Positions 4,306-58,000 are shown, counted from the first letter of the stretch. The stretch is 64,000 bases of DNA from Camelus ferus (GCF_009834535.1 NC_045716.1:29698001-29762000), one strand, 5' to 3'. Numbers and translations are program-made. Notes: generated from the sequence alone by a model not told the origin.

Positions 4306-12546
<8,241 letters not shown>

Positions 12547-20020: not shown

Positions 20021-29264
<9,244 letters not shown>

Positions 29265-31899: not shown

Positions 31900-34230
31900 C
31901 CACCCACCCCTGCAGGTTATGCAACAGCAGTTTCTTACAACCTTTTAATTTTAACAAATGTAGCTTTGCCGGAGTGTTGCAAACACATTCCCACGTACCC
32001 GTCTCCTGGATTCTCTAAATGTTTGCATTTCGCCCCATTCCACATACTTCCTTTATGGAGCTGTCTGGCGCTCTCTGTGTGTCCCTCCCAGACAAGGACA
32101 TTACCTTACACGGCTTCACTGCGGCCATAATGTCGGGTTAGCATCAATCCGGTACCAAAAACCTACATCAGACCTTGTTCAGTTTGCCATTCACTGCATT
32201 GTCTTCAGCCTTTAACCCGCGAAGGTAGGTGACCCTCACACAAGCACAGGCTGGTTATTTTGAAGACTGTCCTTCAGTGTGGGTTTTCCTGATGGGATTC
32301 AAGCTTTGCACTTTCGGCAGCACCTTTACAGAAGTGATGCTCTTCAGCGTGCCGTCTGTCCCCTTCCTGGAGATGCTGTGACCTGCCTGTCTCCTGTGCC
32401 CTTCTGACATGTTCCGGTCTTTTGTTAGGCACTTGCTTAGTCTAGCGCAGCAAGGTGTTCCAGGCTTACTCTATATAATTTCCTCAGTCCCAGCCCTGAG
32501 ACCAGTCATTTCTCCAAGGAGCCCTAGTACCTTCTGGAGTTCACCCTGACACTCAGAATTTCAAAAGAAGGTTCATTCTTTCCCTTTTTCATATTTGTAA
32601 TTCCCTTGCTTATGCTGAGAAACCTGGCTCCATTATCCATAATGTACTTGTTTGCTCAGTCTGGAGCAGAGTGCCTTCAGCATTGCTGACCTGTGCCAGT
32701 GGACAACCACTGACTAGCGTTTACTATGTGTTTACAGTTCTTTTTTGTCTTTACCTGAGGGCACACAGTCAAAATGCACTGGGGGTGTTTCTCCCCTTCA
32801 TTGTGGGTGTGTAACTCATGTGAAATATGTTCTGTTCGTATATTCCATTGTATTTCCCTGTCCTTGTTTACTTCTGTTTGTGCAATACAGTGACGTGTTT
32901 CCCAAAGTCAGAACTTTTTATAAGTTTTCTTATAAAAAAAACTTCACGATACTCAGTCAGGTGTCACCCCTACCCTGCAACCCATCTCTTTCGTCTTTGA
33001 TTTCTCCTTCCCATGTTTCTTTTTGTACAAATGACTAAGATACCTGTATATTTTCTTACTTCCCCTTCTTCCACAGAACATTTTATGTGTGGCCATTTTT
33101 CAATTAACAGATTTGGAAACTGCTCCACATCAGCTGAGTTCTTTCTTATTCTGTCATTACCGCAGTCATCATCATTTATGTCTGCATTATATTCCACTGT
33201 GTGGAGTTGCCGTTTCACGTTTGACTACTGCATGAGACTAGTAGGCTGTTTCCTAGCTTTTGCAGTCACAAACGAGGCTGCAACAAATAATCTGTGCTTT
33301 ATGTATTTTCTTTTGTTGGAGGTGTATCATCAGGGAAAGTCCTAGAATCGGGATTGCTAAATCCTAAGAAATCCATTTTTTATTAGTGTTTGATGCACGT
33401 CCATAAGGGATGTACCAATTTGCTTTCCCACCAGTAATGAATGAGGGTGCCTGATACCCCACCAGCAGTATGTGTATTCATACTCTTTGATTACTTGATT
33501 AATGAGAAGTGGTATCTGTGTAGCTTTAATTTGCATTTCTCTGACTGACTGAGGTCAAACTTAGGTTTCAAGATCTAACTTATTTATGAATTACATCTTC
33601 AGTCCACTTTTCTATTGGATTTTTGGTATTTATTTTCCTTTCAGTCTTTAAGAATTCTTCATGTATCAGCGATATTAGCCCACTGCCTGTGAGATATTTT
33701 CTTCCTGGTGTCAGTTGCCTTGTTTGTAGTATCTTATTCTCATGGAAATGTTTTGTTCTGTTATATTTTCATACGGTCAAATTGATTCATCTTTTAAAAT
33801 TTCATCTGGACTTTGAGTCATAGAAAGTCTTCCTCCACACCCGTGTCAAACAGGACAGGCATTTGTGCGCGTGTTCTGCAGTGCTTGTTGGGTGTCAGTT
33901 TTTACATTCAGATCCCTCATCTGTTTCTTTATTCTTGTGTGTGCTGTGAGATATGAATTAACTGTTTCCAAATTTTAACCAGTTATCCTGCACTATTAAA
34001 AAAAAAAAAGCCTATCTGTATCTATCTCTGGACTTTCTGTTTTATTCTACAGATCGGAATACTACACAGACTTAATCACAGATGCTTCATGGTGTGTTTT
34101 AATGTTCAACAGGGCTAGTCTCCTCACAGTTTGCTTTAAATAACTTTTCCTCGGTATTCTTTCATGCAACCTTTTTCAAGCACATATTTAAGTAAAATTT
34201 TTATGACAAAAGTTGATGCTCTCAAGTGTC
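31900..34230 (-). mobile_element. Ancient L1 fragments (antisense)
   Basis: T-rich decayed sequence with reverse-complement L1 ORF2/3' UTR motifs ('aggctgtttcctagcttttgcagtcacaaac...gggattgct...cccaccagtaatgaatgagggtgcc'). Boundaries approximate. Confidence 0.55.
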
Positions 34231-34332
34231 AAAATGAAAATACCACAAACAGGGTTTCCAGGGATGTTACAGATCTGGGAGCGGAGGCGTGGCTGGGCCT
34301 CACCCACCGAGGTCACAGGCCCTGAAGACAGA

Positions 34333-35964
34333 CTAGGACAGCTGCTGCTTTGAGCGCCGCTCTTTCTCACTGTGCAGCTCCCTGTAGCAGGTGATTGCAT
34401 CACTGACTGCTCTTGAAACTTGCAGCGTCCACTCATCACCGGGGCTTCCACTGGTGAGGACCTGCAGGCCCGCCTCGAAATGTGACAAGGCGGCCGACAG
34501 CTCTGTGGTGGTCAGCTGACGCAGGACAGGGGCAGCATCTTCACTGTCCTCCTCTCTTGCCGGCTGCTGTTCCAGCTGCATCAGCTCCTCATTCGAGAGA
34601 TCTTCCTCATGGGAGCACAGCAGCTGGTCCACAGCAGCTCCCAGCACCTCTCCAAGAGCCACATTCTGGGCAAGGGTCACAATGTTTTGTCGAAGCCGTG
34701 CAATGTTGTCTGTTTGGGAAACACTCTGGAACTGAACACACTCTGGCCAAATCTTCTTCCACACGCTGTTCATTGTTGCTGGTCTGAGCTCCTCCCAAGC
34801 TACTGCAATGTTGTCCACAGCATCCATGATGCTGTAGTTTCTCCAAAACTCCCTGATTATAGCTGTATCCTCCCCATCTGTGGCTTCTAGGATGTGCTCA
34901 AAAGTCCTTCTCAGGTAATGTGCTTTGAAGGCAGAGGCTACACCTTGACCCATGGGCTGGATCAGGTCAGCTGTACTGTCATGAAGATATTCCACTCTCA
35001 CGTTATCAGACAGATTGCTCAAATTTACTGGGTGGCACGGTGCACTGTCTAAGATGAGCAGTGCTTTGTTAGTGAGATTATTTTGGGCACAGTATTTTTC
35101 AACTGCAGGGCAAAAAAAGTACGTAAACCATTCATGAAAGATGCTCCTGGTTGCCCAGGCCTTTTTGTTTGAGCGCCAAATTACTGGCAGATTGGGCTTG
35201 GAGTACCCCTTCAGAGCCTTGGGGTTTTCTGAGTGGTACACCAGTAAGGGCTTCAACTTGAAGTCCCCAGCTGCGTTGCCACCGAGCAGCAGCATCAGGC
35301 GTTCTCTGCATGACTTAAAGCCTGGCTCAGCTTTCTCTTCTACTGAAAGGAACGTTCCTTCAGGCATTCTTTTCCAATACAGACCTGTCTCATCTACATT
35401 AAAAACTTGCTGGGGGGTGTACTCACCTTCTCGGATAATGCTTTTCAGTATTTCTGGATAGATATCCTTGTTGCCAGTGGCTGTGCTGTTCGTCTTGAAG
35501 TGAGGCAAACAATGGCGCTCCTTGAATCTCACAAACCACCCTTTACTTGCACTAAACTTCTCTGTCTGAGAGCTTTCACCCTGTTCACGCTGCAAGTCAT
35601 CAAACAAACTCTTAGCCTTCTCCTGAATAACTGCGACACTCACGGGCACGTTTCGCTGGCTCTGGTCTTCAAGCCACACACGCAACAGGCGCTCCATGGT
35701 CTCCATGACTGCACTTCGGTGGCGAGTCAACCGAGAGGCTCTCAAGGGAGTAGCTATTTGTGAACTCACTTTGATTTTCTCTTTATTATCTCGGATCGTT
35801 GCCACTGTGGAGACAGCGAGGCCTAAGGTCTTTGCAATTTGGCTGAGCTTTTCACCCACTTCAAATCGTCTTAACACTTCTAATTTCATGTCGAGGGTAA
35901 TTGCCTTCCGTTCCCTTTTGGCACTCGGGATGACCATTGCATTTAGGGGCCTTTTCCTAGGCAT
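34333..35964 (-). CDS. CENPBD1: Tigger/pogo transposase-derived protein (543 aa): CENP-B N-terminal HTH, HTH_Tnp_Tc5, DDE_1; at the syntenic position of CENPBD1
   Basis: First true ATG at 35964 (the track's start at 36099 is GTG). Motifs [12 protein letters not shown]...STVATI; LLRVWL...[15 protein letters not shown]; [12 protein letters not shown]; [10 protein letters not shown]; IQPMGQG; Tigger-like C-terminus CYREL. Lies between DEF8 and AFG3L1 on the minus strand, like human CENPBD1. Symbol assigned by synteny. Confidence 0.85.
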
Positions 35965-36269
35965 CTCTGCCTCCAAAATGTACTGAAATGACAGCAGTCC
36001 CCGGTGCAAGAAAGCCTGTGGTTCCTCTATGCCCCCTTGCAGAACTAGGGAAAGCGAAAATGGGGCTTCGAGAAGGCGCAGGCTGACGTCCTCGGACACG
36101 GGAAAGGGTCACCACAGGCCTGCCTAGCCACGCTGCCCAGAAACAGGGCAGTTCATTCTGCCCTGGGCAGTGTGGGCCTCCAGTGTCAATCAGTGTCCAA
36201 ATTCCTGGAAAGCAGGCACATCTAAACTGGCGTGTGCCTCCGTGATGCAGAACACAGAAATCCGTGCAG

Positions 36270-37290
36270 AAGAATAGCGCCGCCGGGCACACGGCGTACA
36301 GGCTCCCAGGTCCCGGAGGGAGCTCAGGAAAGCAGCCCAGCGCGCCGCCGCCGCCGGCCTTCGCTTTGTGAGCCGCTTCCCAGGGAGGACCCCAGAAATG
36401 GGTGTTCTTGGAGATGCCCGACTTAAAATAAGTCTCGGGCCTCTGGCCATCTTAGCGCCTCGCTCGAGTCGGCCACTGGGGTTCCGGCGCCCAGCTGTCT
36501 GGGTAGGGCAAGCAGCGCTCACGTTCGTATCCTAAAGAGTCGGGCAATAGAGTAGACACCTAACGAGAGGCCCCGGGAGCGCACCCTGTCCTTACTGCGC
36601 ACGCGTGAGGCTTCGCAGAGGTCGGCGCGGGGGCGTGGCGCCTTATGACCTATTTGCCGCAATACTGCGCCTGCGCGCGCCCGAGCGGCGCGAGGTCAGG
36701 GGTGGAAATGTTGCAGTGGCTGGCGGCGTGTCGGTGGCCGGGCCGCTCGCCGTGCTGTGGCAATGCGGCGGTGGCCCACGAGGCGGCAGGACGGCCAGGG
36801 CAGGCTTGAGGGCCCTCGGAACCGCCCGGCAGGTGAGCGGGGAGGTGCTGGCTCCCCGCCGGTTCCGGGGGGCGGGGGTGGTGATGGTGGGGGCGGCCGC
36901 TCTCGTCGCCGCGGTGACGCCATCCAGGTGCGCCGGCCGGCGCGGTGGGGCGCCGTGCAGGAACACTGTGAGAGAACGCGAGGGGAGCCCGGGAGCCGAG
37001 GGGCGGCGACCGCACGTCGGGCCTTGCGGCCCCGGGCTCCTCCCCAGTCCCTGCGGCCGAGGCGGCTGCCCGTGGCCGGAACCTGTCTCCCTCTGTTCTC
37101 TGAGCCCCCGCCCTTCTCCCTGCGGCGCCTTCCGCCCTTGGAAAATTCCCGCTGCCCCTGCCTCCTTATTGCCCTCCCCAAGGAGCCCCACGTTGAGTGC
37201 ACTGCGTTCAAGCCTCGCTCCACTGCGAACCTGCCCTGTCTTCTCGGGCGCTCGCTCCGACTGCGAAGTGGTGTCCTCCTGGGCTCAGCG
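36270..37290. promoter_or_regulatory. Bidirectional CpG-island promoter (CENPBD1-like minus / AFG3L1 plus) with NRF1-like and YY1-like motifs
   Basis: CpG island between head-to-head genes; TGCGCACGCG (36596-36605), TGCGCCTGCGCG (36666-36677), GGCCATCTT (36445-36453). Confidence 0.8.
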
Positions 37291-40200
37291 GTAGTACTGC
37301 CTCTGCTCTGTCAGTCTCGCAGAGTTGCTCTCCTATATGAAGATGGACAAGAAGGAGTTTTATAAAGTGTTAACGTAGTTGTTATTCATCGTTTTTGGAG
37401 CCCAGTACCATCACTGTAATAATAGCTTACACTGTTTGAGGGCTTCCGTGCTAAGGGCTCTACAGGAATTATTTCATTTAAGTCATAACCATCCTGCAGG
37501 TAGGCGCTTGTATAATCCAATTTTATAGAAGAGGAAATATAAGACCGCAGCTGGTCGGCTGCTGCTCCAGCCTCTTCACTTTTAGATACTTCTGTACTGT
37601 ACGCCCTCTCCTGGGTTCGGTACTGTGAAATATTATTCCACATTTTACGGTTGCTTTTTTTCTTTTTTCTTTTTCTTTTTTGTATTGATACAGCCTTAGG
37701 GTGCTGTCACATTGAAGGACCTCAGTGGTTTTGGTTGTGAAGGGAAGAAGTTGGATGATTTTTGAGTTCCTTCCGAGACTCTGTTATTCGTCTGTTGAGA
37801 GTCTCCTACCTGGGTGACATCATGGTGAGCAGGACAGGCAAGGGCTCTGCCCCGTGAACTGCTCTGCTTTGAGGGCTTGGTGATTTGTAGGCTGAGGGGC
37901 CATGCAAAGGCTGGGGGTGAAGTAGCAGTCAGCACTGTAGGTAAAGGATATACCCGTGCAGTCTGCACTCATCAGGTGGAACCCTATGTTCTGGAAGCTT
38001 CTGTGCAGGTATTTTTTCATTCAGTGAGTTTCCTACACTGCCCCTGCCACCCAAGAGGGAGAACCAGACAACAAGCACGTATATAGCATGCAGGTGGTTA
38101 TACGAGGTGTGAAGGAAGAGAAGATAGAGCAAAGGCAGTGAGAATGAAGAGAAGGGAGTGGAGGAGAATAAATGCCACTTTGTCTCAGGTGGGATAGTCG
38201 GCTCCTGAAGGGAGGAGGGTACTGAGCGGTGGCTCGCCAGCAGGTCGACGAGGGCCGGTGAGGCCGCACGTGAGTGACTCTGATACACAGACCAGGGTCC
38301 CCTGATGTGTGATCTGGCGCAGAAAGGACAGTGGTGCTTTGCCTGTCAGCAATGGGGCAGCCTTGCTGAGCCAGCTTCATGTCTTGGCTTTGCATATGCA
38401 AAGACCAATTTAGAAAGCTCATCTAAACCAAATGCCAAGAATGGATAGTAGACCCCTGTCTTTTGAGAGTTGCAGCCCACCGAATGTGGTCCCCTGACTA
38501 ATCAGAAAAGGATTAGATCTCAAAGAAAAAGAGTTGGATGTTTTATCAAGTTTTGGGGCCTGAAGTGTTGTCCTTTGTACCTCTGGGGTTGTAGACCACC
38601 TGATACTGCTGTCGAGCCACCTGCATCGCGCTGGTTCTGGAGAGACCTGGGAGGTTTGGGCACCAGAGTCCTCATTGTGTACCTCCGGCTCTGCGTTATC
38701 GTACCTCAGGCACTTGTGGACCTCTCTGCACTTCTGCTTGTCCGCCCTGCAGTGGGAACAGTGGCAAGTACTTTCTCAGCAGGGGCATTGAGGGTCGGAG
38801 GAGGTGACAGAAGCACCTGGCGCACATCTGGTGCCTAGGGACCTGTGCTCCTTCATCTAAATCTCTTCCCGGTGACGTGCCTCTGTGACGTCAGGTCCTC
38901 GTTCTGCTGTGCACGGTGACTGGCTGCAGCAGGGAGGTTCATTCCCAGTGCAGAAGTTTCAGGATCCCCAACACCGTTACCTGTGGCTTTTCCTTTCTGA
39001 GTCCCCCTGCATAGATTTTCCCCGATTTTAACGTCTTTCTCATAGCTTACCTTACTTTTTAGTTCTTCTGGTCTTTGATAGGCGTATTTGAATACTTTGG
39101 CTAGTAGCAAATTAATCATTAGGGAATGAGTTTACTTTGAAGAGTGCACTGCCTCATCGTGAAAGACGGCACGGCTGGAATAACACAGTTGTCACCCGCA
39201 GACCCGGCTTCATTAGGATAAAACACTGGGGCCATCCCGATCTGCGGCTGGGTTGGACTTCTCTGAGCACAGTCAGTACTGTGAGTGTGGTTGGTTCTGT
39301 CTTTTCAGTGTGGTGGCTTTTCTTGTGCCTGCTTTTGCTCTGGTGGCTTTCTTCTACAATAGTGGGGACTGAAATGTCTCTAGTCCTGACCTTGACTGGT
39401 GTTAAGTACTGTTAGCAGCTTTTGGTAAAAGCTGTCATTTTCCACTTTGAGGACTAAAGAAAATACAGGGTCTGGAAAAATGTTTGCTTTCCTGACAAAA
39501 GCACTTATCCTTGGCTGAATAAAGATAAATTGTAGTACCCTTTGGTTTTTAAATTTCACATAATTTTAATGTTAGAGTAATTTTTTTTTTTGAGGCTGTA
39601 ATATTTTCAGTGAGCAAAATTGCCTTGGGCAAGAAGTGATTAGTGTGCTTTTGTTTGACAGCTGTAGCTATGAAAATTTGTCACGCATTTCTACATTGAA
39701 TTTATTTTCCACTCATCCTGTTTGAATCATATAATAGACAAGGGCGTCCGGGCTATACCTCAGCCCGAATCCTGGCCTCTTTGAACCTGTAATGGCCACT
39801 GTGAGAAAATGCCCCATGGTATTGCAGAAGCAGCTAATTGTCTCTCGAGTTTCAATGCCTCCAGGGAACCTGCTTTCAGCAGCAGGCTCTGCAGACGAGA
39901 CCACCGTCATTTTCCTAGTGGCTGTGTTCAGAACCATCCAAAGGTACCTGTCTTTCCCCTCGCATCACTGACAGCACAATGCTTATGGGAACTGAGTGTG
40001 GCTTCCTCTGTATCCTCCATAGTGGGGAACTGGGGACAGGGTGCATGACCAGGAGGCTCTGTGCCCCGCCTTAGCTTCCACACTGAGTCACATTTAGCTC
40101 ATCCTGTTTCTGGGTCACCTCTACATCTTTATGGTTTTGATATATCGTTGAAGACGGTGAAGGAGAAACTTCCAGGAGGAAGTTGCTTGATAAATCTTCA

Positions 40201-45032: not shown

Positions 45033-48000
45033 TCCTCCTGGCCAGTCTGAAAGCATACCCGTGGCCCACTGCACACTCAGGCGGTGGTGCACTGCGTTGG
45101 ATAAAGTGTGCCAGGTAAGCTGGGCAGCGATCCAGGCTGTCCAAGATCTCAGTGTAATGGGGACAGTGAGGGTGCCCCCACCCTCGTCTCACCAACGTGA
45201 AGGCTGGAGGGGCCTTGCTGTCTGGGGATTGTGTGTTGCAGAGGAGAAGCTGGGATGTGCAGGTGCTTTGAGACCTCTCTATGCCAGGTGTTATGGCTGT
45301 ATTACAGACATGTTCAGGAGTCTGTGTTGTAGTGGTTGTGGTGGTGGTGAGTCTCCACACTTAGGACTGTGTCCTCATTGTCCAGTCCTGGGCCCTCCTG
45401 CCATTTCCACAAGCAGCTGTGTTGTAGTGGTCAAGATGGTATAGACAGGAGGCGGACGAGGTGATGTAGGCACAGCCTTTGCCGTGTCTGATGCGCCCTT
45501 GGAGGGCCTGTGGGCTCCAGACGGCAGGTGGGCGGGCGACAGAGGGCTGCACGTTCATTTCGTTGGCATGCCCCTGACTGGATGGACAGAATGTTCCCAA
45601 ATCAGCTCTTCTTTCAACGTAAGCTCTTTTCAGTTTGTGTTCCTTTTGGATTTTCAAGCCAGTTTAGAAGCTTAGTGCTCAGTGTACCAAGTTATAATTC
45701 CTGTTCTTGAATTGGTTCCTGTTTATTAAAATAATCCCAAGCTAAAAATGTCCCTGTTAGTGCAATACGAAGCCAAGGCCTGTCTGCAGAGTGTGTGCTG
45801 CTCCCAGAGCCGGGGCGCCTGTGCGTGTGGATGTCTGAGGACCGAGGCCCGTGCCATGCTGACAGATGTCCTGCTTGTAACTCGGCTGCTGTGACTGGCT
45901 TTCTCTCTTCTAGGTGGACCGGTTGGAAGTCATGAACAAACAGTTTGTGCGTGTGATTCCTGCCCCTGGGACACCATCCGAGGTGAGGGGTGGGCTCGGC
46001 TGGGTGTTCCAGACATAGCTTTTGGTATTTAGTGTAAGATGTAGTTTTATGTTTTTTTAGAGAGATGCCTCGCTGAGTTTCAGTATCCAGCACCCACCTG
46101 TGTTAATGTGCTCCTTGACTTTGTTGGCACATCGGATAGCACAGGACCCCTTATAAACCTGCAGCTGTGATTTCAGTGTTTTAAGTAGCACGTAAGAGCC
46201 ACGAGCCAAGATTTGGGATGAGAGGAAGATGGCGTGAGGGAGTGAGGAGGCAAGCAGGTGTCAGTAGTCGATGGGCATTTTGTATGTTGACCTGACGCCT
46301 GAGCCTGTGCTTTGGGGGCCAGGACAGCAGGGCCTTCAGAGCTGCTCAGGGCTTCGCTGGGAGAGGAGCTGGTGAGGGAGGTGGCGGCCCTGGGTGGGGG
46401 CCACCTTAGGTGCCTCGGTCTCTGCAGAAGTTCGTATGGTTCAGCATCGGCAGTGTGGATGCCTTCGAGCGGAACCTGGAGACTGCTCACTGGGAGCTGG
46501 GCATCAAGACCCCCAACCGGATGGCCGTGGTCTGCACCACTGAGAGCGATGAGAGAGCCAGGGTGCAGTCCAGGGCCTCTGGCTCTGAGCACAGAACAGT
46601 TTAGTGCTTAACCTATTTTGGAGGGTGCATCCTTCCAGCCAGTTACAGGCATCTGCTAATAGTTATAATGTCCGTAGTGAAAAATCAATTTGTTATCTAT
46701 TTTTATTGAGGAAAGGCTTGATCAGGGAAAAGTTTAGCTAGACAGCCTTAGAAAAGTGGTGCAGTGCCTGCGGGACAGATGCTGACACATTTTAGAAAGA
46801 AACTGCTCCCTTTTGTGTTGCAGGGCCAGGCTCTGGAGCCCTCAGTGTTCTTGCCTGGAGGGCCGTGTTTCTGGCCTTTCCCTTGAATATGGCAGATGGT
46901 TTTCTTGGACTCTCTAGCTCTTTCTTTCAAAGCCTGGTGCCCACCGTTCTCCTGGTCGGCATCCTTCTCTGTACCCTGAGGAGAGGTCCGATGGGGGCTG
47001 GGCGTGGAGGGAGCCTCTTCAGTGTTGGTGAGACCACAGCCTGGGTCGTCAGGGACAACATCGGTGTGCGGTTTGCAGACGTGGCCAGTTGCGAAGAGGC
47101 CAAATTGGAGATCATGGAGTTTGTGAATTTCTTGAAGAATCCCAAGCAATATCAGGACCTCGGAGCCAAAATTCCAAAGGTACTGACTTCAGAAAACATG
47201 GTGATGCTGTGAGCTTCGTCCTGGTTTGTTGTTGACAGCTTAGCCTTTTGTGACTTTGGTTTTAGTGGTCCATTGCAGTGGGGAGAGGAAACAGCGTTTG
47301 CAGAGTAGAGCAGTGAAAATCCTCTCATCTGATGCGCTCGAGACCACAGTGAGGTGACTGTTTTAAAGTATGAAACTGGAATCACAGGAACAGTACACGT
47401 CTACCTGGAGTGAGTTTATTTCCACTCCAGGCACAAATGTGTGTTTTTCCTTGGTGTCTTGGAGGGCAGGCCTTCCTTTGAGTTTGGCACCCTATTCAAA
47501 CCCTCTGTTACGTTTCTTGCATAAACCACTTACTATCTGTGGTTGTGATTTTCATTCAAGTACAGTCCTGTATTTTTATGACATTCTTTCACGTTTTCTT
47601 ATCTGTTCAGTTTGGCAGCCTTGTTTTTTTTTTTTTAATGCAGTTTGCTTTTTTGCTTTATTATCCAAAGCCTTCAGCTTCGTTTTTGAAGGAACCGCTT
47701 TCTTTACTCCTATTTTATTAACTTATGTGGTATTAAAGTACATAATTAAAACAACAAGCACTGCCCTTGTAAACGGGTCTGGGACCAGATGCAGCTGCCT
47801 CTTGGGAAGCCCTTGACCCAGCAGGTGGAGCAGGCATGCAGTGTGGCCGCAGGTCAGGTGTGGCACAGGGAAATGGGGGCTCGGGGGTGGACCTCTGAGG
47901 GCCCGGCTGAAGCTGTGAGTCCTTTTCCCAGAAAGATTTGTGTCTCACAGGAAGTAGATTCACAGATCCCTCGAGGCGTCCCTGGGCTCTGGACCAGGCT

Positions 48001-48546
48001 GAGAGCCCTCCTGGTGTAGACCGTCCTCACCCCACAGAGCTTCCCCAACATGGTCCCTGCGGGGAGGGTACTGCCGACACCTTACTCTGAACAACAATAG
48101 AAGATGACTGACCATTGGGGATTAGAGGGCTGGAGGCATGTGTTTCTGCCTGACAACCTGGTGAGAGCTGGCTGGAAAGCTCACGAGTGTGGCCGGTGCA
48201 CAAGCCGCCTTCTGCTCCTGTTGGAGCCGCACCAGCAGGGAGCCCAGCTGTCGCTCACCTTGGCTTAACAGGCAGGTGCTGCTGGGGGTGCTTCTGTGTG
48301 CCTTTCAGGAATTTTTTCTGGGGCTTGTGTTTCCTGGGAAAGTGTGTGTGGTAAACAGTGGGTGTGGCACAGGCAGGTGACAGAAGAGCCTCTCGTGTGG
48401 AGGGAGGGCACTCTGTCAAGTCTGCGTGGTGCTGAGGACGCTGGGGCCTGTGTGACTTCCTAGCTCCCGCTGGGTGTGATCTGCAGTAAACGTGGGCACA
48501 GGGACCCTGGGTCCACTGCCTTCTGTCTTTTTTGTTTGTTTCTGTC

Positions 48547-48665
48547 TTTTTTGGGGGTGGGTAATTAGGTTTATTTATTTATTTATTTAATGGGGGTAGC
48601 TGGGATTGAACCCAGGACCTTGTGCATGCTCAGCAGCTCTCCACCACTGAGCTCTGCCCCCCCCC
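48547..48665 (-). mobile_element. tRNA-derived SINE (camelid type, with CCTAATTAC tail)
   Basis: Minus strand GGGGCAGAGCTCAGTGGTGGAGAG...CCTGGGTTCAATCCCAGCTACC followed by (AAAT)n, CCTAATTACCC and A tail. Confidence 0.8.
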
Positions 48666-51600
48666 CCCCACTGCCTCCTGTCTTGAAGAGACTGGCAGGG
48701 ATGGAGCGTGAAGACCCTGTGCATGGTGGGCTGTGACACCTCCATGAACCCCACCTCCCCATTCACAAGACGTGGGGCCCCAGCACCTGTGGGTTGAGTT
48801 GTGGCTCCCTCCTCCCCCACTTTACATATTTTGTTTCTGTTCTTAAAGACTTAAAAAAATTACTTTATGGTCTCTTTTGAAATAATTAGATATTAACCCA
48901 CAGCACGGACTGGAAATAAAGCAACATAAGCCCCCCTTTAAGTCTCTCCTCAGTTTCCAGGCATAGTGGTGTCCACAGAAGGAGCACTAAAGTGTGTCAC
49001 TAGGGCATGAATTGTGATTCTAACCCTCAAGTCAGTGCAGAGAAGGGCAGGCCGTAGACAAGGAAGCACAGCAGCGGCGGCCACACAGCTGCTGCCTTCC
49101 TGCTGCCTTGGGGCCAGCTGGACAGAGTCTCTGTGGCCACAGTATACACCACACCCTGTGACCCAGCTAGTCCTGCCTGGGAGCGTTTCCTGAAGAAATA
49201 ACACGCTCAGCTGCGGGGAGAGGGCACAGGGGGCTTTGTGTGTCTGCACCATCTGAACGTTTTACCATGAAACAGTAAACCAGTTTTACTGTGAACATGC
49301 ATTCATCTCACAAGCAGAAAATGTTAAACAGAAAGCACACCTCAGACTGCCAGCGCGGCGCACTCCTAGAAGGCATCCCTGGAGGGCGCCTGCTTCAGTG
49401 GGAGGGGGCGCTCTGCTCCCTCCGGCTCCATCCGTCCCCTTAAGAACCAAGTGTCACCTTTTTGTTCCAGGGAGCCGTGCTCACAGGTCCTCCTGGTGCT
49501 GGCAAAACTTCTCACCAAGGTGACTGCGGGGGAGGCCAGTGTGCCTGTCATCACTGTGAATGGGTCCGAGTTCCTGAAAGTGTTTGTGGGCGTTGGGCCA
49601 GCTTGGGTAGGTGGATGCGCTCTATCCCTGCCCCGGGTCTGTGTGGGGCCCTGGCGGTGGGCACCAAGCAGACCACAGATGTGCAGGGGAGACCCAGGTG
49701 GGCAGACAGCAGCTTAGGTGGGTCAGGTTCCAGAAGAGGGGGCTCAAGTTGGTAGACTCTTCTTCCTGTCTTTGTGCCGGTAACAGAGTAGACTCTGTGT
49801 GGACTCCTGTTTCAGGTTTGCGACATGTTTGCGATGGCCTGAAAAAATGTCCCTTGTATCTTATTCATTGATGAGATGGGTGCAATTGGCAGGAAACGAG
49901 GCTGCGGGCACTTTGGTTGCCAGAGCGAGCAGGAGAACACCTTGAACCAGATGCTGGTGGAGGTGAATGGTGAGACCCCACATTACCGTCTGCCAGGCCT
50001 TCATTTCTGTGCAGTAGCTCCCTGGGCGAGAACCCCTGATTATTCTGTTTGAGAAAGGCTGTTTTCAGGCACACGTACTGGAGAGAGCTGTTCGGTTCAC
50101 ACAGGCCCCACTGTCAGCAGGAGGACCAGGTGTTGGTGCCCTCCCCGGCCCGGGGCTCACAGGTGCCCAGGCTGCCTCTTGCACCAAAATCTCTCTCCTC
50201 TCTCCCCCTCGAGACTTATGCTCAGAGAGGCTCCAGCCGAGTCTGACAGCCTGCCAGGACTGCTGATGCCTCCCGGGAAGTGTCTAGGCCTTCGTGCCAG
50301 TTTTTGAATTTTGGAAAGCTTTCTGTGGTCCTTTGGCAAATCTTGTCTTCTCTTCATCTTTGTAACTGTGTTGGGGTTCGCGAGATTACCCCGGGTTTGG
50401 TGATCCACTGGAAGGCCTCCATGTTTAGTTGTGTTCGTACTGTGGTTGACTTCAGTGACAGGACACAGAGGAGAATCACGGGGAAGAGGTGCCTGGGCCA
50501 GGCCCAGGGAAGCCGGCCACAGCTTCCAGAGGCCCTTCCTATGGAGTCTCAGGGCACACTTCCTCCCCTGGCAGTGGGTTGGATGCCACTCGGGAGTGCT
50601 GTCGGCCAGGGTCAGGGTTCCCAAGGGGGTCGGGTCATGTGGCACCCTGCGCCAGCACATCCCGGGGGGGAAGGTGCGTGCTTGGCGTGAAGCACACTGT
50701 TTGCAGAGTGTAGACACAGGGGGCCCCACTTATCAGGGAGCAATGGAGACCCTCCTTAAATCCCGGGTCCCAGAGACGGTCGGGGGCCCTGTGAGCAGGC
50801 CTTGCCAAAGATGTGCTGGATGGGACTGCCGTGTGTGCTTTTCTGAACAGGCCAGAACGTTGCTCAAGTCTTCAGTTGTATTGAGTATCCAACAGTCATT
50901 CTAATTAAGCTGTTACTCTGTCCTGATGTCTGGAGGGGCTGATGGGAGAGACAGTTGGAGGGGAAGGAGGTTGGGAGCACTTCCTCTCCCCTGGCCCTGC
51001 CAGGTGCCCTGTTCTCCTTTGTACGGCCCTACCTGCCGCTGTCCCGTCTGGCTCCCTGGTCTGCAAGCCTTTCAGCACCTGGGTGATCCAGGGCACTGAC
51101 AGTGGTGGGGGGAGGTCTCCCTGACCCCTGCAGGTTGCCGCGTGGTGTCAGAGGCTGGCAGGAACCAGTAATGAGTTAGGATGGGGGTCCACACCCTGAG
51201 ACTGGGCTGTGGGGGTCCCAGTTAGCTGAGGAATGGCTGGTTACCCACCAGTGCAGATGCCTCTCAGAGCAGTGGGGGACTGTGGGGGCCTAGCTGCTGG
51301 TTCCTGCGTGGCAGAGTGGGTGTCAGAGCCAGCCTTGGGTGTGAGTGTCTGCCCCACGCTGAGCAGCCTGTGCAGTGTGCTGTGGAGCCAGTGGGAGGAG
51401 ACGCAGAGCCAGTGTGGGGCTTCCCAGGGTGGGCAGTGGTTCTAGAAGGTCGGGCCAGGTGTGCAGGGGAGAGCAGGGGAGAGGAGAGGCCCCTCGGAGT
51501 GTGGTGCTGACCTGACAGGTGCCGACCGCACCCTCTCCTCGGCCTTACCTGCTCCTCTTGCATCCAGGGTTCAACTCGGCCAACGACGTCGTGGTGCTGG

Positions 51601-51701
51601 GCCGGCACCAACCGGCCTGGCGTTCTCAACCCGGCCAGTTTGACCGCCAGATTTACATTGGTGAGTGTGCTGGCCACCCGGTGCTCAGGCTTGGGGTTTC
51701 A

Positions 51702-51739
51702 TTTGGGTTTGGGTGAAAAATTTGGGTTTGGGTGAAAAA
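51702..51739 (+). repeat. Perfect 19-bp tandem duplication (TTTGGGTTTGGGTGAAAAA x2)
   Basis: Copies at 51702-51720 and 51721-51739. Confidence 0.9.
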
Positions 51740-53049
51740 TTTAGATAGATCATTAGATGTGTATTTGAAGGAGATTTTTGATTGAGGTCCTAAAGCAGTT
51801 AATACAGCGTTTTGAAACAACGGAGGAACATGTGTGCCCTCTACTTTTGGAAAGAACAGGTGTGGTTGGCCCCGCAGGAAGGTCACTGCAGTCCATGCAG
51901 CTGGGAGTGATGTGACGGACGTAGAGTTTTCAGCTTTTGTTCTTCATGCGCTGTTACAAAAACTTAAAGGGCAGTTTACAAGGGGAGTTCACTGTGGCCC
52001 TTTCCACTGAGGAAACGTCGGTCCTGCAGCCTACATCTGCTCGTGGTTGGGTCCTGGTCCCGGGAATGGGTTTGCTGTAGGCCAGAGGCTGCACCATCCG
52101 GAAAGTGTTTTAATGTGTTGAAAAGCTGAATGACCACCATGACCCATGGTTCACTTCTGCCCTGGCCCTAGTCGGGCAGCCAGGTGTGCAGTGCAGACAC
52201 ACGGGTGGTGCCTGGAACCTCAGACTGCCCTCACAGCCTTTGTGAAGTGGCTGCAGGTGACCCTCATCTGGCCGTCTGTGCCTCTGTCTCTCTCTGTTAG
52301 GCCCCTCTGACGTCAAAGGCAGGGCCTCTGTTTTCAAGGTCCACCTGTGTCCACTCAAGTTGAATGAGAGCCTCAGCAGGGACACCCTGGCAAGGAAGCT
52401 GGCGGTCCTCACTCCAGGCTTCACAGGTGAGTGTTGGCCAGGCTGTGTTGTCATGGTGCCACTCTTGTCTTTAGAAAGTTGACTCTGTTGGGACATGTCA
52501 GCGGTCTCAAGAGATTATTACCCCAAAGCTAATTTGTACTTGTTTGAATTTCTGGTTTAATTCTGTTTAGACTTGATACGTTTTTGTTGCAGAGATCAGA
52601 CTGACATCTGAGGGCAGACAGGTGAGGTGAAGAAGTTGCCGTGCGTTTTTTAGTCTTGGGCTTGCCCTCCCACCTGGGGGCTCCCTTTGCCTTTCTCTCT
52701 TCTTTGTGGTCAAAACCCAAGAGTTTACACTGGGGAACTTGTTTCCCTACCAGAGTGGTTTAAACATCAGGAGTTCACAGCTTTTCCAGGGGCTCCTGTC
52801 CATCGTACACCTCCTCAGCAGCCAGGGGGCTTTGCAGGCCTCATGGTTACCATGGCAAGCCGCTGGCCGCTGCCTCTGCCCCTGCCCCTCTGGGAACATA
52901 ATGTGGTGGTGCCTCAGCCCTCCAGCCACCACGGCCTCCGTCTCCTCAGTGTCCTGCCCAGGGAAGAAGTAATGGATGAGCACTTCCCAAGCGGGATAAA
53001 AGACATGAGTCTACACATCCAAGAAGTTCAGGGAACTCCAAGTAGGGAT

Positions 53050-55072
53050 GGAGCCTGAGACATCCATACTGAGATGTACTGTAATCCACACTGGTCAGAA
53101 GCAAAGAGGAGCTCTTAAAACCAGCAGGAGAGGAGGGACATGTCATGTACAAGGGTCTTCAATGAGATTAACATCTGATTTCTCATTGGAAACCAAGGAG
53201 GCCAGAAGGCAGAGGATCTGGCGAAACTCTTTTTCAATGATGAAGGAGAAATTAAGGCATTTCCAGATACTTTTAGGAGTTGAGAGAGCTTGTTATATTT
53301 AAACCTGCCCTACAAGAATCATTAGAGAGCCCTTCAGGCTGAAGTGAGTGAGCCAGTAACTTGAGGCTGTGAGGCAAGATAAAGGTCACTGGTAGAGGCC
53401 GCTGCGTAGGTAAATAGAAAGGCTGGCGTGGTGGTCTTTTTGGTTTGTAACTCCTCTTTTTCTCTTTATGGCTTGAAGGACGAGTGCATAAAACCATGAT
53501 TACAAGTCTGTTAATGGGTGCATGATGTAAAAAGATGTAACCTGAGACAGCGTCAGCATAAAGCTGGAAGGAGATGTGTAGGAGCAGAATGTCTGTGTAT
53601 CATTAAAGCTAGAGATGGGAAAGCTGATCTTAAAACTCACGTGGAACTGCCAGGGGACTGAGTAGCCAACAGCATCTCGTGAAAGAGCAGAGTTGGAAGA
53701 CCCACGCTCCCTTTGTTCAGAGCTTCCTGTGAAACTCCAGCAGCCAGAACAGGCAAGAGGGTAGGCGTGGACCAGTAGAGGAGAATTAAGAGGCCAGACA
53801 CGAGTCTCTGGTCCGTCGTTTCTGTCAAGTATACGAAGACCATCTGACGGGGAAAGAACAGTCTGTTCGACCAAAGGTGCTTGGACGGTGATCTCCACAA
53901 GCAAAGACGGAAACTGGACCTCAGGCTGTATGCAGAGGTCAACTCAAAGTGGTGAAGAGGCCAGAGTTTGGAGCTAAAACTGTAAAGGTCTTAGAAGGAG
54001 ACAAGGGAGAGGGTCTTCGTGGCCTTGGATTTGTCAGTGGCTTCTTAAACCTGCAAGCAGCAAGTGAAAGAACAAATCGCACTTCCTGAAAATTGCAATC
54101 TTTCGTGTGTCAAGGGACACTGTTGAGGGGATGAAAAGACAGCCTACAGGATGGAAGAAAATACTTGGAGATTATGCATCTCGTAAGGGCCTAGAGTCCA
54201 GAATTTGCAAAGAACCCGATTTAAAAGTGGGCAAAGGATTTGAATAGACACTTTTCCAAAGAAGAAATACAAATAGCCAGAAAGGACATGAAAAGATGCT
54301 CAGTGTTATTAGTCATTAGGGAAATGCATGTCAAAACCGCAAGATCCCACTTCACACCCTCCAGGATGGCCACGAAAGACAGACAGACGGAAGAGCTGGC
54401 AGGGTGTAGGCAGGTGGGAACCCTCCCTGTTGGTGGGATGTAAGATGGTATGTCTGTGGAGGTCAGTGTGGCAGTCCTTCAAGAAGCGAGATACAGTTGC
54501 TGTATGACCCCAGTTCCACTTGGGCATCTACCTAAGAGAATTAAAATCATTTTTCCACACAAAGACTGGTACATGGGCATTCACAGCAGCATTATTCATA
54601 AGGTGGGTACCACCACAGTGTCCATCAGGGCATGACCTGCAGATGCAGAGGGCCAACAGTACCACACTGTTTTGTACAAGGGGCTTGGGTTTCTGTGGAT
54701 TTTAGTGTCTCCTTGTGGATACCTTGGGACAGCTGTACTTGGAACATTATTCAGCCGTAGAAAGGACTGAAGTACTGATTGGTGCTGCGATGCTGGAGGA
54801 ACCTCACAGTATTTTGCAGGTGAAAGAAACGGACACAAAAGACTACATATTGTATGATTCCTTTTCTGTGAAACTTCCACAGACGGAAAGTAGATTAGTG
54901 GTTGGCGGGGGTGGGTACGAGAATTAACCATGTAAGTGCCAGGAATGTCTAGAATGAGATTAGGGCAGTAGTTGCACATCTTGATAAATGTACTAAAAGT
55001 CTTTGAAATAGACCCTTAAAATGAGTAGATTGTACATTAAATAAGTTATTCCTCAATAAATTTTTGAACCAA
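53050..55072 (+). mobile_element. Old L1 (L1M-type) with deleted ORF1/ORF2 remnants and 3' UTR
   Basis: ORF1-like 'gagattaacatctgatttctcattggaaaccaaggaggccagaaggcag'; ORF2-end 'gaatagacacttttccaaagaagaaatacaaatagcc'; 3' end 'ctcaataaa...aaaaaa'. Boundaries approximate. Confidence 0.75.
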
Positions 55073-58000
55073 AAAACTGGCTAAAAGCAACGGTGACTGA
55101 CAAAGCAGCTTGCATCTCCTTCCAGTCCTTGACCTGGTCTGCTGTGGTCCCTTGACTGGAGACTTTCCTGTGACAGTCTGCCCTGGGGTGCTAATGGGAC
55201 TGCTCCCCCTGGCAGGCGCTCGTACCTCTAACGTTTGCACTGAGGCGGCCCTAATCACTGCCCGCCACCTGAGCCCTTTGGTTCCGGAGAAGCACTTTGA
55301 GCAGGCCATCGCGAGGATCATCGGAGGTAAGCTGGGCTGCCTTGAGGAGGGGACGTTTCCAGCTCTGACCTGCAGCAAGCTCACCCTGGGGCCCTAGCTT
55401 CATGTCAGTGCACTGGAGCCGGGAGCGGTCTTCCAGACCGGAATTGGGAACTGGGGTCTGCCAGCAGCTTCCATATTTTTTCTGGAGCAACATTTAGAAT
55501 CTCAAAGATGAGGGACCTCCAGGGTGCTGAATCAGATCCAGGTTTGGGTTCTCACTGGACAGGAGGAATGTTTGCTGGGTGCTTCCCCCTGAATGCTTGC
55601 AGGGGCCATCCCAGCACTCCTACTGGACCAGTGCACTGTGAGGGGTGAAGGCTGGAGTAGGGGCTTCAGCGTGGGGGTAGGGGTCTCCTGAGGGCCTTCC
55701 CAGGACGGAGGTCAGGGAGGTGTCTGTGTGGCCAGCAGCTCAGCTGTTCATACTCCGTCCCCATGGCTGTGATCACCACCTCACCCAGACAGCAGGTTGG
55801 CCACCCTACTTTGTTTGAGTTTCCCTTTTTATCGACGTGTAACACAACCAGAGAAGTGCGGAGAGAGTATCAGTAGCCCAGGACAGTCAAGGGCGATCTG
55901 GTGGCTCTGGCGAGCTGACTGGCCACAAAGCTGCGCTCAGCACGAGGGGTCTGTGCCTTGCTGTGCTCTGTTGCCTGCCTGTGACTGGGCTGTAGGCCAT
56001 GTAGAGAATTCCTCCTCGTTTCTCGTGCGGACAGCATCACTTCTTCTCAAGCCATGAAAAGTAGCTAATCTCTCACCCACCCCAGAGCCATCTGCTGCTT
56101 GTAAGGGAGATGGGTTGGGACCTGGTGTTTCCATAGAGCAGAAGGCAGCATAGTGTCTAGTGTGTCTGGCATGTGGGGATGGCGCAGAGTGGGGTCTGAG
56201 GAGTGTATGTGGAGCAGACGGCTGGGTCTGTTCTGGTTGGACACAGGCTCTGACCAGCCCCCAGCATGCCCCAAGTGCAGAGTGGGAACTTGGTGCCCAC
56301 TCCTCAGCTGTCCGTTCCTCCTCTCCCTCTTACGAGGACTCTGATTTGTAGGTCTGGAGAAGATGACGCAGGTCCTCAGCCTGGATAGAAGACAACGGTG
56401 GCCTACATGGTGGTGGGCTGGTTCCTGGAGCACGCAGATCCCCTGTTGAAAGTTGGTCACATCCCTTCGCGTGTCTGCACGGGGAGGGGCAGGGCCCACT
56501 CCCCTCCTAGCTCATCCCTTGGTCTCCAGGCGTGGGTGCCTGTGTGTAGCATGTGGCCACATGGGCACAGTACCTTCAAGGTGGCAGCCTTTTTGCTTTC
56601 AAGGAATGCAGTGGTCTAGAATTTGTTATAAGACTCCTTGAGGGTGAGTGGGTAGAGAGCTGGGTGCTGGTTTCAGGAGGGGTTTGGGTGCTGGCCACCT
56701 GACATCTTCTGAGGTTTTACCCGATGGCTGGCTCCTCTGCAGGATAGGTGAGGAGGGGTTTCATGTTAATTGTTGGGGTGACCCCCGTCAGTGGTGGGGC
56801 CCAGGGTCCGCTCTCCTTCCACACTCCTGCAGGGAGACCAGTGCTCAGAGGGGCAAGGTTGGTCCGGGATGCCCCAGGGCTGGGGCCATGTCTTGCAGGT
56901 GTCCATCATCCCCCGGGGCAAGGGGCTGGGCTTTGCCCAGTGTGTGCCCCGGGACCAGTACCTGCACACGCAGGAGCAGCTCTTTGACCGCATGTGCATG
57001 CTGCTGGGCAGCAGGGTGGCCGGAAAGCTGTTTTTCTGCCAGGTCGCCACAGGGGCCCAGTATGACTTGAGGGAGGTAACCCAGAGCGCCTATGCCCAGG
57101 TAGAGCAGCGCTGGGTGGGGGGCTCTGCACGCGAGTCTGGCCGGGCTCACCTCCCTCCACCCCCACTCCAGATAGTGCAGTTTGGGATGAGTGAGAAGCT
57201 GGGTCAGATGTCCGATTTTCCCCAGCAAGGCGAAGGGCAGGCGGGGAGGCTGTACAGCGAGGCCACAGCTTGGCTTATCGATGAGGAGGTGAGGTACCTC
57301 ATCAGCTCCACCCACGAGCTGATGCCGGACCTGCTGACGCAGTGCCAGGAGCAGGTGGACAAGGCAAGTGCGGCTGGGCCGGCGCCCATCCTCCGGGAGT
57401 TCTGGTGATTCGCAGGCCCCTGACGGGCGGTGGGACTTGCAGGTGGGCAGGCGGCTGCTGGAGAAGGAGGTGCTGGAGCAGGCTGACATGGTGGAGCTGC
57501 TAGGCCCATGGCCCTTCACCGAGAAGACCACCTACAAGGAGTTTGTGGAGGGCACAGGTGGCCTGGAGGAGGACACATCCCTTCCTGAGGGGCTGAAGGG
57601 CTGGAACCTGGGGCAGCAGGAGGTGGGCACGGAGCCCAGTGTGTGGGAGAGCCCAGCCTAGTGCCTCTGCTTTGGAGGGCAGCTTCTGGAATCGCTGGAA
57701 AACAAATGAAAACGTGGTGACTGCAAATGGGCAGTTGCAAATAAGGGTTTTCTGAGCCCACAGATTCCTGCTCCCAGAACACGCCTGTTCCCTGAGACGG
57801 GGCTGGGACCCTGTTCCTGAGTCATAGGGGACAGTGGTGGGCAGTGGGCTTCTCTGATGGGGACCTCCAAGGAGGGGGAGGGGGCTTTTGGCTCAGTTCA
57901 GAAATGCTCAAGGTTTGGTGAGGTGGCAGAATTAAGAAAAGGAAAATATAAGCCAGGTATCCAGGGAAATAGCTGTTTGGGTTGGTAGAAGGCCTGTTTG

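What the first reader, a model, noticed from the sequence alone, without database searches (positions are those of the whole stretch)
34333..35964. Full-length intact Tigger-derived transposase gene at the CENPBD1 locus, with the whole DDE domain
Seen: a 1,632-nt stop-free ORF with two N-terminal HTH DNA-binding domains, a complete DDE_1 domain and a Tigger-like C-terminal tail; no terminal inverted repeats were noticed; a plausible acceptor (gctgtcatttcAG, plus 35983-35984) lies 18 nt before the ATG. Known: Tigger/pogo elements are ancient and normally riddled with stops, and human CENPBD1 is described as a short product (under 200 aa) retaining only the DNA-binding domains. Inference: this is a domesticated TIGD-like gene under purifying selection in this lineage, and the human copy is a truncated relic. 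It would be a little-studied domesticated transposase of unknown function. The neighbouring AFG3L1 exons, with many stops, show what neutral decay looks like at this locus.
Basis: partly seen in the sequence, partly recalled or inferred. Interest (0 to 1): 0.82.

Follow-up and report, generated by a model that had tools for sequence, protein, structure and literature searches.

The report
Camel CENPBD1, a domesticated Tigger transposase
This is the intact camel copy of CENPBD1, an old jumping-gene enzyme that mammals kept as an ordinary single-copy gene; it is real and under selection, but it was already catalogued, camel copy included, in a 2020 paper.

Summary
Window 34333-35964 (minus strand) is an uninterrupted 543-codon ORF with CENP-B_N, HTH_Tnp_Tc5 and DDE_1 domains. 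The window comes from a camel assembly (GCA_009834535.1).

- Full-length orthologues (540-548 aa) lie in the same slot, between AFG3L1 and DEF8, in alpaca, whale, seal, horse, elephant, aardvark, koala and monito del monte.
- dN/dS is 0.135 (95% CI 0.115-0.159) and below 0.2 in every domain.
- No inverted repeats flank the ORF, and no near-identical second copy was found.
- The human Swiss-Prot product (B2RD01, 187 aa) matches only residues 1-185.
- Neighbouring AFG3L1 is decayed in this camel.

Two corrections.
- The DDE domain is complete as a fold but its catalytic triad is broken: D191, D306, G339 ("DD32G"). Marsupials have lost all three residues. The conserved function is therefore not transposition.
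- The proposed splice acceptor at 35983 has no support: seven public contigs are colinear with the genome across it.

It is not novel. Gao et al. 2020 (PMC7386202) describe CENPBD1 as a Tigger-derived, therian-only gene of about 540 aa with Ka/Ks 0.18 and DD32G. Their Table S2 lists the Camelus ferus protein. The function remains untested.

The parts
34333..35964 (-). CENPBD1 coding sequence: 543 codons plus TAG, in a single coding exon
   Evidence: It is 100% identical to protein cluster representative P0001, 99.8% to Camelus bactrianus and 98% to alpaca. The gene range equals the CDS length in all annotated orthologues.
35770..35919 (-). First helix-turn-helix (CENP-B_N / psq type), residues 16-65
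   Evidence: Pfam PF04218, 3.7e-07. PDB 1HLV, the CENP-B DNA-binding domain, matches residues 19-151. dN/dS for residues 1-70 is 0.092.
35503..35703 (-). Second DNA-binding domain (HTH_Tnp_Tc5), residues 88-154
   Evidence: Pfam PF03221, 2.1e-15. dN/dS for residues 71-160 is 0.081, the lowest of the protein.
34759..35304 (-). DDE_1 Pfam match, residues 221-402. The RNase H-like fold as a whole spans about residues 185-405.
   Evidence: Pfam PF03184, 3.5e-40, full profile. The AF2 model shows the strand/helix order of a DDE fold. The nearest solved structures are the Mos1, Metnase and Sleeping Beauty catalytic domains. dN/dS is 0.138.
35392..35394 (-). Codon GAT = D191, the first triad position (NVDETG). 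Kept in most placentals, Gly in marsupials.
35047..35049 (-). Codon GAC = D306, the second triad position (LILDSAP). Glu in marsupials.
34948..34950 (-). Codon GGT = G339, where active Tigger/pogo transposases have the third catalytic Asp (QPMDQG). Here the motif is QPMGQG.
   Evidence: Gly in 19 of 23 therian orthologues (Ser in horse and manatee, Cys in hippo, Ala in mole). Asp in sawfish, octopus and turtle Tigger copies. 'DD32G' in PMC7386202.
34333..34749 (-). Tigger-like C-terminal tail, residues 406-543, mostly helical with an acidic linker
   Evidence: Helices in the AF2 model. Aligns along its whole length with Tigger relatives. dN/dS is 0.198.
35965..36342 (-). Probable unspliced 5' leader with two short upstream ORFs (ATGs at 36221 and 36156).
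   Evidence: Four of seven Logan contigs start at 36333-36342 and all seven are colinear with the genome. Upstream ORFs. The boundary is inferred, not shown.
34084..34332 (-). Probable 3' UTR, with ATTAAA at 34098-34103. Further AATAAA signals lie at 34041-34046 and 33928-33933.
   Evidence: Contig ends at 34084, 34096 and 34098. Poly(A) signals. The block conserved between camel and elephant ends at 34095.
36200..37400 (.). CpG island between CENPBD1 and the AFG3L1 remnant, a probable bidirectional promoter
   Evidence: GC 0.57-0.77 and CpG observed/expected 0.76-1.09. In horse, elephant and koala the AFG3L1 gene call starts 700-900 bp upstream, head to head.
24333..29264 (+). DEF8 (C1_1 + RH_dom), the tail-to-tail downstream neighbour. 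It extends beyond 24333.
   Evidence: Gene call in L001, converted to window coordinates. The same neighbour is present in eight other species.
46910..57351 (+). Decayed AFG3L1 (AAA + M41 protease) exons, the upstream head-to-head neighbour
   Evidence: tblastn with E. coli FtsH shows a frameshift at 49508/49509 just after Walker A GPPGAGKT, an in-frame stop at 49840-49842, Walker B DEID changed to DEMG, a second frame break at 51549-51662, and no HExxH exon. Peptidase_M41 match at 56890-57351.

Best explanation
This is the camel orthologue of CENPBD1. A Tigger (pogo superfamily) DNA transposon inserted once between AFG3L1 and DEF8 in the common ancestor of marsupials and placentals. It lost its terminal repeats and has since been kept as a single-exon host gene.

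Shown here:
- The protein keeps two N-terminal helix-turn-helix DNA-binding domains, a complete RNase H-like (DDE) fold and the Tigger C-terminal helical tail.
- All four parts are under purifying selection.
- The catalytic triad is not maintained: D-D-G in the camel, G-E-G in marsupials.

Inferred: it most likely works as a sequence-specific DNA-binding protein and not as a transposase. The dead catalytic core and tail would serve as a scaffold for DNA or protein contacts or for oligomerisation, as in CENP-B, JRK and the TIGD proteins. Plausible targets are remnants of Tigger-type terminal repeats. It is probably expressed from the CpG-island promoter shared with the AFG3L1 remnant, as an intronless mRNA of about 2.25 kb. 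The gene is dispensable in some lineages: it is truncated in human and reported missing from most primates and rodents.
For: - Intact ORF and domains.
- Orthologues of 540-548 aa at 85-88% identity in Laurasiatheria and Afrotheria and 67-73% in marsupials.
- Conserved synteny, AFG3L1 head to head and DEF8 tail to tail, in eight other species including two marsupials.
- dN/dS: 0.135 overall (CI 0.115-0.159); 0.09 and 0.08 in the two DNA-binding domains, 0.14 in the DDE region, 0.20 in the tail. The camel-alpaca pair gives 0.31 (12 nonsynonymous against 11 synonymous changes), which still departs from neutrality at P = 0.006.
- All length differences among the nine coding sequences are multiples of three.
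- No TIRs.
- Triad D191/D306/G339, with Gly at the third position shared by marsupials and placentals.
- Fold: nearest solved structures are Mos1, the CENP-B DNA-binding domain, and the Metnase and Sleeping Beauty catalytic domains. Nearest Swiss-Prot models are TIGD1, TIGD2, JRKL, TIGD6/7, JRK and CENP-B.
- Independent published agreement: PMC7386202 gives about 540 aa, Ka/Ks 0.177, DD32G and Theria only. Its Table S2 lists Camelus ferus XP_006173803.1, 543 aa.
- Transcript model: seven colinear contigs with clustered ends next to a poly(A) signal.
Against: - No functional data exist for this protein. DNA binding and its targets are inferred from domain homology only.
- The AF2 model is of middling confidence (mean pLDDT 65.8, pTM 0.49).
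- Transcription is not cleanly shown. A control stretch inside the AFG3L1 remnant (38300-41800) is held at 0.98 by the same RNA-seq studies. Presence in those runs could therefore reflect pre-mRNA or genomic DNA, and I could not confirm that the seven Logan contigs come from RNA libraries.
- Repeated loss in Euarchontoglires shows the function is not essential everywhere.
- Placentals keep two of the three acidic residues, so a residual metal-dependent activity is not formally excluded.
Confidence: 0.9

Rival explanations
1. It is a recently inserted, still autonomous Tigger transposon copy whose open frame is intact only because it is young.
For: Full-length transposase architecture. Many databases name the orthologues 'tigger transposable element-derived protein 1'.
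Against: - No flanking inverted repeats or Tigger TIR motif.
- Same syntenic slot in nine species back to marsupials.
- The closest other camel relative is only 51% identical (P0098), and the exact protein is found on one contig.
- The third catalytic Asp is replaced.
Confidence: 0.01
2. It is a neutrally drifting relic whose frame has stayed open by chance or through recent relaxation, as in human.
For: The gene has been lost or truncated in several lineages. Some ungulate gene models are short: cow 381 aa, pig 419 aa. The camel-alpaca ratio (0.31) is higher than the deep ratios.
Against: - dN/dS is 0.07-0.17 in the 35 pairs other than camel-alpaca, and the bootstrap CI excludes 1 by a wide margin.
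- Within camelids, 12 nonsynonymous against 11 synonymous changes departs from neutrality (P = 0.006).
- There are no frameshifts among nine species, while the neighbouring AFG3L1 has acquired frameshifts and a stop in the same genome.
Confidence: 0.04
3. It is a domesticated gene that still uses a nuclease or recombinase activity of the DDE domain, like RAG1 or PiggyMac.
For: The DDE region is as constrained as many enzymes (dN/dS 0.14). Placentals keep D191 and D306.
Against: - The third acidic residue is Gly/Ser/Cys/Ala in all 23 orthologues examined.
- Marsupials carry G-E-G and the mole has Val at the first position.
- Selection is therefore not maintaining an active site. Constraint is strongest on the DNA-binding domains.
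Confidence: 0.05

Closest known systems
[quoted passage not shown] 2020, Mob DNA 11:25 (PMC7386202)
   Same: Length (543 against about 540 aa), domains CENP-B_N/HTH_Tnp_Tc5/DDE_1, the DD32G signature, Tigger origin, low Ka/Ks, therian distribution and position next to DEF8. The Camelus ferus, C. bactrianus and C. dromedarius proteins are in their Table S2.
   Different: Nothing of substance. The paper calls the domestication 'very recent', whereas syntenic marsupial orthologues place it before the marsupial-placental split. The paper itself also states that the gene emerged in Theria.
[quoted passage not shown]
   Same: Aligns to residues 1-185 at 77% identity, which is the two DNA-binding domains.
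   Different: The human product lacks the whole DDE region and the tail. The camel gene keeps them under selection.
TIGD1 / Tigger1 transposase (human Q96MW7)
   Same: Best full-length structural match in Swiss-Prot (E 1.8e-35, residues 8-543), with the same architecture. Automatic annotation often names CENPBD1 orthologues 'TIGD1'.
   Different: Only 38% identity in that alignment. The TIGD1-like paralogues are 50-60% identical and lie at other loci. The name is a mislabel for this gene.
CENP-B, JRK, JRKL and TIGD2-7 (other domesticated pogo transposases)
   Same: The same N-terminal pair of HTH domains and a retained, often catalytically degenerate, DDE fold. This gene probably works like them, as a DNA-binding protein.
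   Different: These are independent domestication events. There is no CENP-B dimerisation domain and no evidence of a centromere role.

Membership tests
CENPBD1 orthologous group (therian domesticated Tigger transposase) | About 540 aa with CENP-B_N + HTH_Tnp_Tc5 + DDE_1 | tested here: met
   543 aa, with all three Pfam domains above the gathering score.
CENPBD1 orthologous group (therian domesticated Tigger transposase) | Fixed genomic position between AFG3L1 and DEF8 | tested here: met
   DEF8 (C1_1 + RH_dom) lies downstream tail to tail. AFG3L1 remnants lie upstream. The neighbours are the same in eight other species.
CENPBD1 orthologous group (therian domesticated Tigger transposase) | DD32G triad signature | tested here: met
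   D191, D306 and G339, with 32 residues between the last two. This matches Table 1 of PMC7386202.
CENPBD1 orthologous group (therian domesticated Tigger transposase) | Purifying selection (Ka/Ks well below 1) | tested here: met
   0.135, CI 0.115-0.159. The published value is 0.177.
Autonomous Tigger/pogo DNA transposon | Terminal inverted repeats (CAGGC...) with a TA target-site duplication | tested here: not met
   No bracketing inverted repeat. The TIR motif occurs at chance level and not within 4 kb.
Autonomous Tigger/pogo DNA transposon | Intact DDD catalytic triad | tested here: not met
   The third Asp is Gly. The triad is not conserved across orthologues.
Autonomous Tigger/pogo DNA transposon | Multiple near-identical copies in the genome | tested here: inconclusive
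   The exact protein is on one contig, and the nearest other camel protein is 51% identical. I could not scan the whole genome at the DNA level.
CENP-B proper | C-terminal CENP-B dimerisation domain and binding to the CENP-B box | tested here: not met
   No CENP-B_dimeris hit in Pfam. About 16-19% identity to the CENP-B models in the structural alignment. DNA-binding specificity is not testable here.

The most novel reading that the evidence does not exclude
CENPBD1 may be a lineage-variable regulator that still recognises the terminal repeats of the thousands of fossil Tigger-type elements in mammalian genomes. Its loss in primates, rodents and some other orders would then have rewired, or released, the genes next to those repeats. 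Camelids would be a natural contrast to human: they kept CENPBD1 while its promoter partner AFG3L1 decayed, whereas human degraded both.
Probability: 0.15. Interest if true: 0.45.

Novelty: already known. Interest (0 to 1): 0.15.

Why it matters
As a discovery it matters little. The gene, its origin, its selection regime, its broken triad and its patchy distribution are all published, and this camel protein is in that paper's table and in RefSeq. What remains open is the function of CENPBD1, which nobody has tested. Species with the full-length gene (camelids, horse, carnivores, whales, elephants, marsupials) are where it could be studied, because human and mouse are poor models for it.

Tried and rejected
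- **Read laying.** I asked for four RNA runs to be laid on 32600-38500. No read-level splice or strand evidence was obtained, and I did not resend.
- **RNA-run word shares as evidence of expression.** 14 RNA runs hold 75-92% of 33800-37300. The control stretch 38300-41800 is held at 0.85-0.98 by the same studies. I therefore do not count this as specific evidence.
Rejected as unsupported, because all seven contigs that carry the gene are colinear across it. A minor spliced form cannot be excluded from contigs.
- **The 588-aa GTG-extended ORF.** This is an artefact of bacterial-style ORF calling, since the orthologues share the MPxKR start.
- **AFG3L1 check.** I had no mammalian reference protein, so I used E. 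coli FtsH from NC_000913 as the tblastn probe. This finds only the conserved AAA and M41 exons. The N-terminal exons were not examined, and the count of lesions is a minimum.
- **Structure.** The AF2 model is only moderately confident. Foldseek E-values against the PDB are weak (1e-3) because the model is multi-domain. I use it only to confirm fold class.
- **Earlier findings of this scan.** Nothing was on record near this place.

Full report
**What is in the sequence**

The minus strand of window 34333-35964 carries an uninterrupted ORF of 543 codons ending in TAG. The ORF lister extends it to an upstream GTG (588 aa). The ATG at 35964 is the start shared by all nine orthologues, which begin MPxKR.

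Pfam finds three domains above their gathering scores:
- CENP-B_N at residues 16-65.
- HTH_Tnp_Tc5 at residues 88-154.
- A full-length DDE_1 at residues 221-402 (E = 3.5e-40, profile positions 2-177 of 177).

The only solved structure found by sequence is the CENP-B DNA-binding domain, 1HLV.

**Where the window comes from**

The exact protein is on one record, CM020788.1 of assembly GCA_009834535.1. From memory, not from a tool, this is the Camelus ferus chromosome assembly. The protein is 99.8% identical to the C. bactrianus RefSeq protein, 99.6% to C. dromedarius and 98% to alpaca.

The rest of the window has the gene order known for human 16q24.3 (the human order is my own knowledge):
- A 317-aa 7tm_1 ORF at 230-1183, the size and place of MC1R.
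- A beta-tubulin exon at 11461-12543, partly masked.
- DEF8 (C1_1 + RH_dom) ending near 29264 on the plus strand.
- This gene on the minus strand.
- AFG3L1 remnants on the plus strand from 46910.

**Is it a host gene or a transposon copy?**

Four lines of evidence say host gene.

1. Full-length relatives of 540-548 aa exist across three groups: Laurasiatheria and Afrotheria (85-88% identity) and marsupials (67-73%).

2. I fetched the DNA of eight of them. In every case the gene sits in the same slot. An AAA + Peptidase_M41 gene (AFG3L1) lies head to head upstream in horse, elephant, koala and aardvark. In minke whale an 805-aa gene call occupies the same upstream position, with no Pfam hit on record. 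DEF8 lies tail to tail downstream in horse, elephant, koala, alpaca, minke, seal and monito. One insertion in the therian ancestor explains this.

3. No inverted repeat brackets the ORF. The Tigger terminal-repeat start given for camel Tigger1 copies in the supplement of PMC7386202 occurs in the window only at chance frequency, and not within 4 kb of the gene.

4. The nearest other camel protein in the search is 51% identical, so there is no family of young copies.

**Selection**

I built a codon alignment of the nine coding sequences and applied Nei-Gojobori counting.
- All length differences are multiples of three and no sequence has an internal stop.
- Pairwise dN/dS is 0.07-0.17 in the 35 pairs other than camel-alpaca, which gives 0.31.
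- Summed over four phylogenetically independent pairs (camel-minke, horse-seal, elephant-aardvark, koala-monito), dN/dS is 0.135 with a bootstrap 95% interval of 0.115-0.159.

| Region | dN/dS |
|---|---|
| Residues 1-70 | 0.092 |
| Residues 71-160 | 0.081 |
| DDE region (161-405) | 0.138 |
| C-terminal tail (406-543) | 0.198 |

Camel against alpaca gives 12 nonsynonymous and 11 synonymous changes (ratio 0.31). That is fewer nonsynonymous changes than neutrality predicts (binomial P = 0.006).

The first three are tested and none is met. The fourth, transcription, remains unresolved (see the transcript section).

**The catalytic triad**

The alignment includes Tigger copies from sawfish, octopus and turtles that carry the canonical NVDETG / LLLDN / QPMDQG motifs. 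Against these, the camel protein has D191, D306 and G339.
- Gly at the third position is shared by marsupials and most placentals. Horse and manatee have Ser, hippo has Cys and mole has Ala.
- Marsupials also have Gly at the first position and Glu at the second. The mole has Val at the first.

The active site was therefore already lost in the therian ancestor and is not under selection, while the fold around it is. The AF2 model (mean pLDDT 65.8, pTM 0.49) shows the strand and helix order of an RNase H-like core, with these three residues in the expected elements. Its nearest solved structures are Mos1 transposase, the CENP-B DNA-binding domain, and the Metnase and Sleeping Beauty catalytic domains.

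**The human copy**

Against Swiss-Prot models, the best full-length matches are TIGD1 (38% identity in the alignment), TIGD2, JRKL, TIGD6, TIGD7, JRK, TIGD5, TIGD4 and CENP-B. [quoted passage not shown] It is 187 aa and aligns to residues 1-185 at 77% identity.

**The neighbour used as a neutral yardstick**

I had no mammalian AFG3L1 reference, so I used E. coli FtsH. The conserved exons are recognisable between 46910 and 57351, but they are damaged:
- The frame shifts at 49508/49509, directly after Walker A GPPGAGKT.
- The next exon has an in-frame stop at 49840-49842, and its Walker B reads DEMG instead of DEID.
- The exon around 51549-51662 needs two frames.
- No HExxH exon was found.

Elephant, koala and aardvark have 787-792-aa gene calls with the AAA and Peptidase_M41 Pfam hits. 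Minke has an 805-aa call without Pfam on record. Alpaca has no call in the 10 kb examined. The contrast with the clean CENPBD1 frame 11 kb away is real.

**Transcript and the proposed acceptor**

Seven public Logan contigs (2.2-5.0 kb, seven runs) encode the protein. All seven are colinear with the genome at 99.9% identity.
- None breaks at 35983.
- Four start at 36333-36342.
- Three end at 34084-34098, next to an ATTAAA at 34098-34103. Two others end near further AATAAA signals.
- The block conserved between camel and elephant ends at 34095.
- A CpG island covers 36200-37400.

This fits an intronless mRNA of about 2.25 kb from a promoter shared with the AFG3L1 remnant, with two short upstream ORFs in the leader.

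I rate this only as probable, for three reasons. I could not confirm that the contigs come from RNA libraries. The RNA-seq studies that hold this stretch hold a control stretch inside the AFG3L1 remnant just as fully. The acceptor is unsupported, not disproved.

**Comparison with what is known**

Gao et al. 2020 (Mob DNA 11:25, PMC7386202) list CENPBD1 among 12 pogo-derived vertebrate genes. They report:
- It derives from the Tigger family.
- It is about 540 aa with CENP-B_N/HTH_Tnp_Tc5 and DDE_1.
- Its triad is DD32G.
- Ka/Ks is 0.177 +/- 0.098 (n = 62).
- It emerged in Theria.
- It is absent from Lagomorpha, Scandentia and Xenarthra, missing from most primates and rodents, and continuous in Laurasiatheria.

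Their Table S2 lists the 543-aa proteins of Camelus ferus (XP_006173803.1), C. bactrianus and C. dromedarius with DD32G. My independent results agree on every point. The finding is a correct rediscovery. The earlier framework for such genes is Mateo and Gonzalez 2014 (PMC4231638).

**Mechanism**

Shown:
- The architecture, orthology, synteny and selection.
- The loss of the triad.
- The absence of transposon ends.

Inferred from the family: a sequence-specific DNA-binding protein whose dead catalytic core and helical tail serve as a scaffold, possibly recognising Tigger-type repeat ends.

Not shown: any binding target, any partner, any phenotype.

**Verdict**

This is a real, well-behaved domesticated transposase gene. 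It is already known, so interest is low.

Noticed in passing
window 46910-57351 (+): AFG3L1 is a decayed pseudogene in this camel. It has a frameshift after Walker A (49508/9), an in-frame stop at 49840-49842, Walker B DEID changed to DEMG, and no HExxH exon. Elephant, koala and aardvark have roughly 790-aa gene calls with AAA and Peptidase_M41 hits, and minke has an 805-aa call in the same position without Pfam on record. Alpaca has no call in the 10 kb upstream of CENPBD1. This would be a loss independent of the human AFG3L1P one. I did not establish whether it is shared by all camelids.
   Followed up: partly
window 230-1183 (+); 11461-12543 (+): There is an intact 317-aa rhodopsin-type receptor ORF of the size and position expected for MC1R. 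There is also a beta-tubulin exon (GGGTGSG) interrupted by masked N runs at 11688-11910 and 12170-12501. Together with DEF8 these give the gene order known for human 16q24.3.
   Followed up: partly
proteins P0052-P0056, P0070, P0104, P0120: Tigger-type transposase proteins of 710-785 aa carry an added SCAN domain (PF02023). They occur in marsupials (62-63% identity to the query) and in whales, a mole and a bat (51-56%). This looks like a separate SCAN-transposase fusion gene family. I did not check whether these are real genes or merged gene models.
   Followed up: no
window 38300-41800 and 33800-37300: RNA-seq runs labelled 'reproductive system metagenome' and runs of the host species hold 85-98% of the words of a stretch inside the AFG3L1 remnant that shows no FtsH-like exon. 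So either these libraries carry much pre-mRNA or genomic DNA, or the pseudogene region is transcribed throughout.
   Followed up: partly
window 36156-36221 (-): Two short upstream ORFs (11 and 10 codons) lie in the probable 5' leader of CENPBD1. Their conservation was not checked.
   Followed up: no
proteins P0064, P0078, P0079: Lobster and octopus Tigger transposases are 42-56% identical to this mammalian gene over their full length. That is as close as many vertebrate Tigger copies, which is compatible with the horizontal spread of Tigger elements but was not analysed.
   Followed up: no
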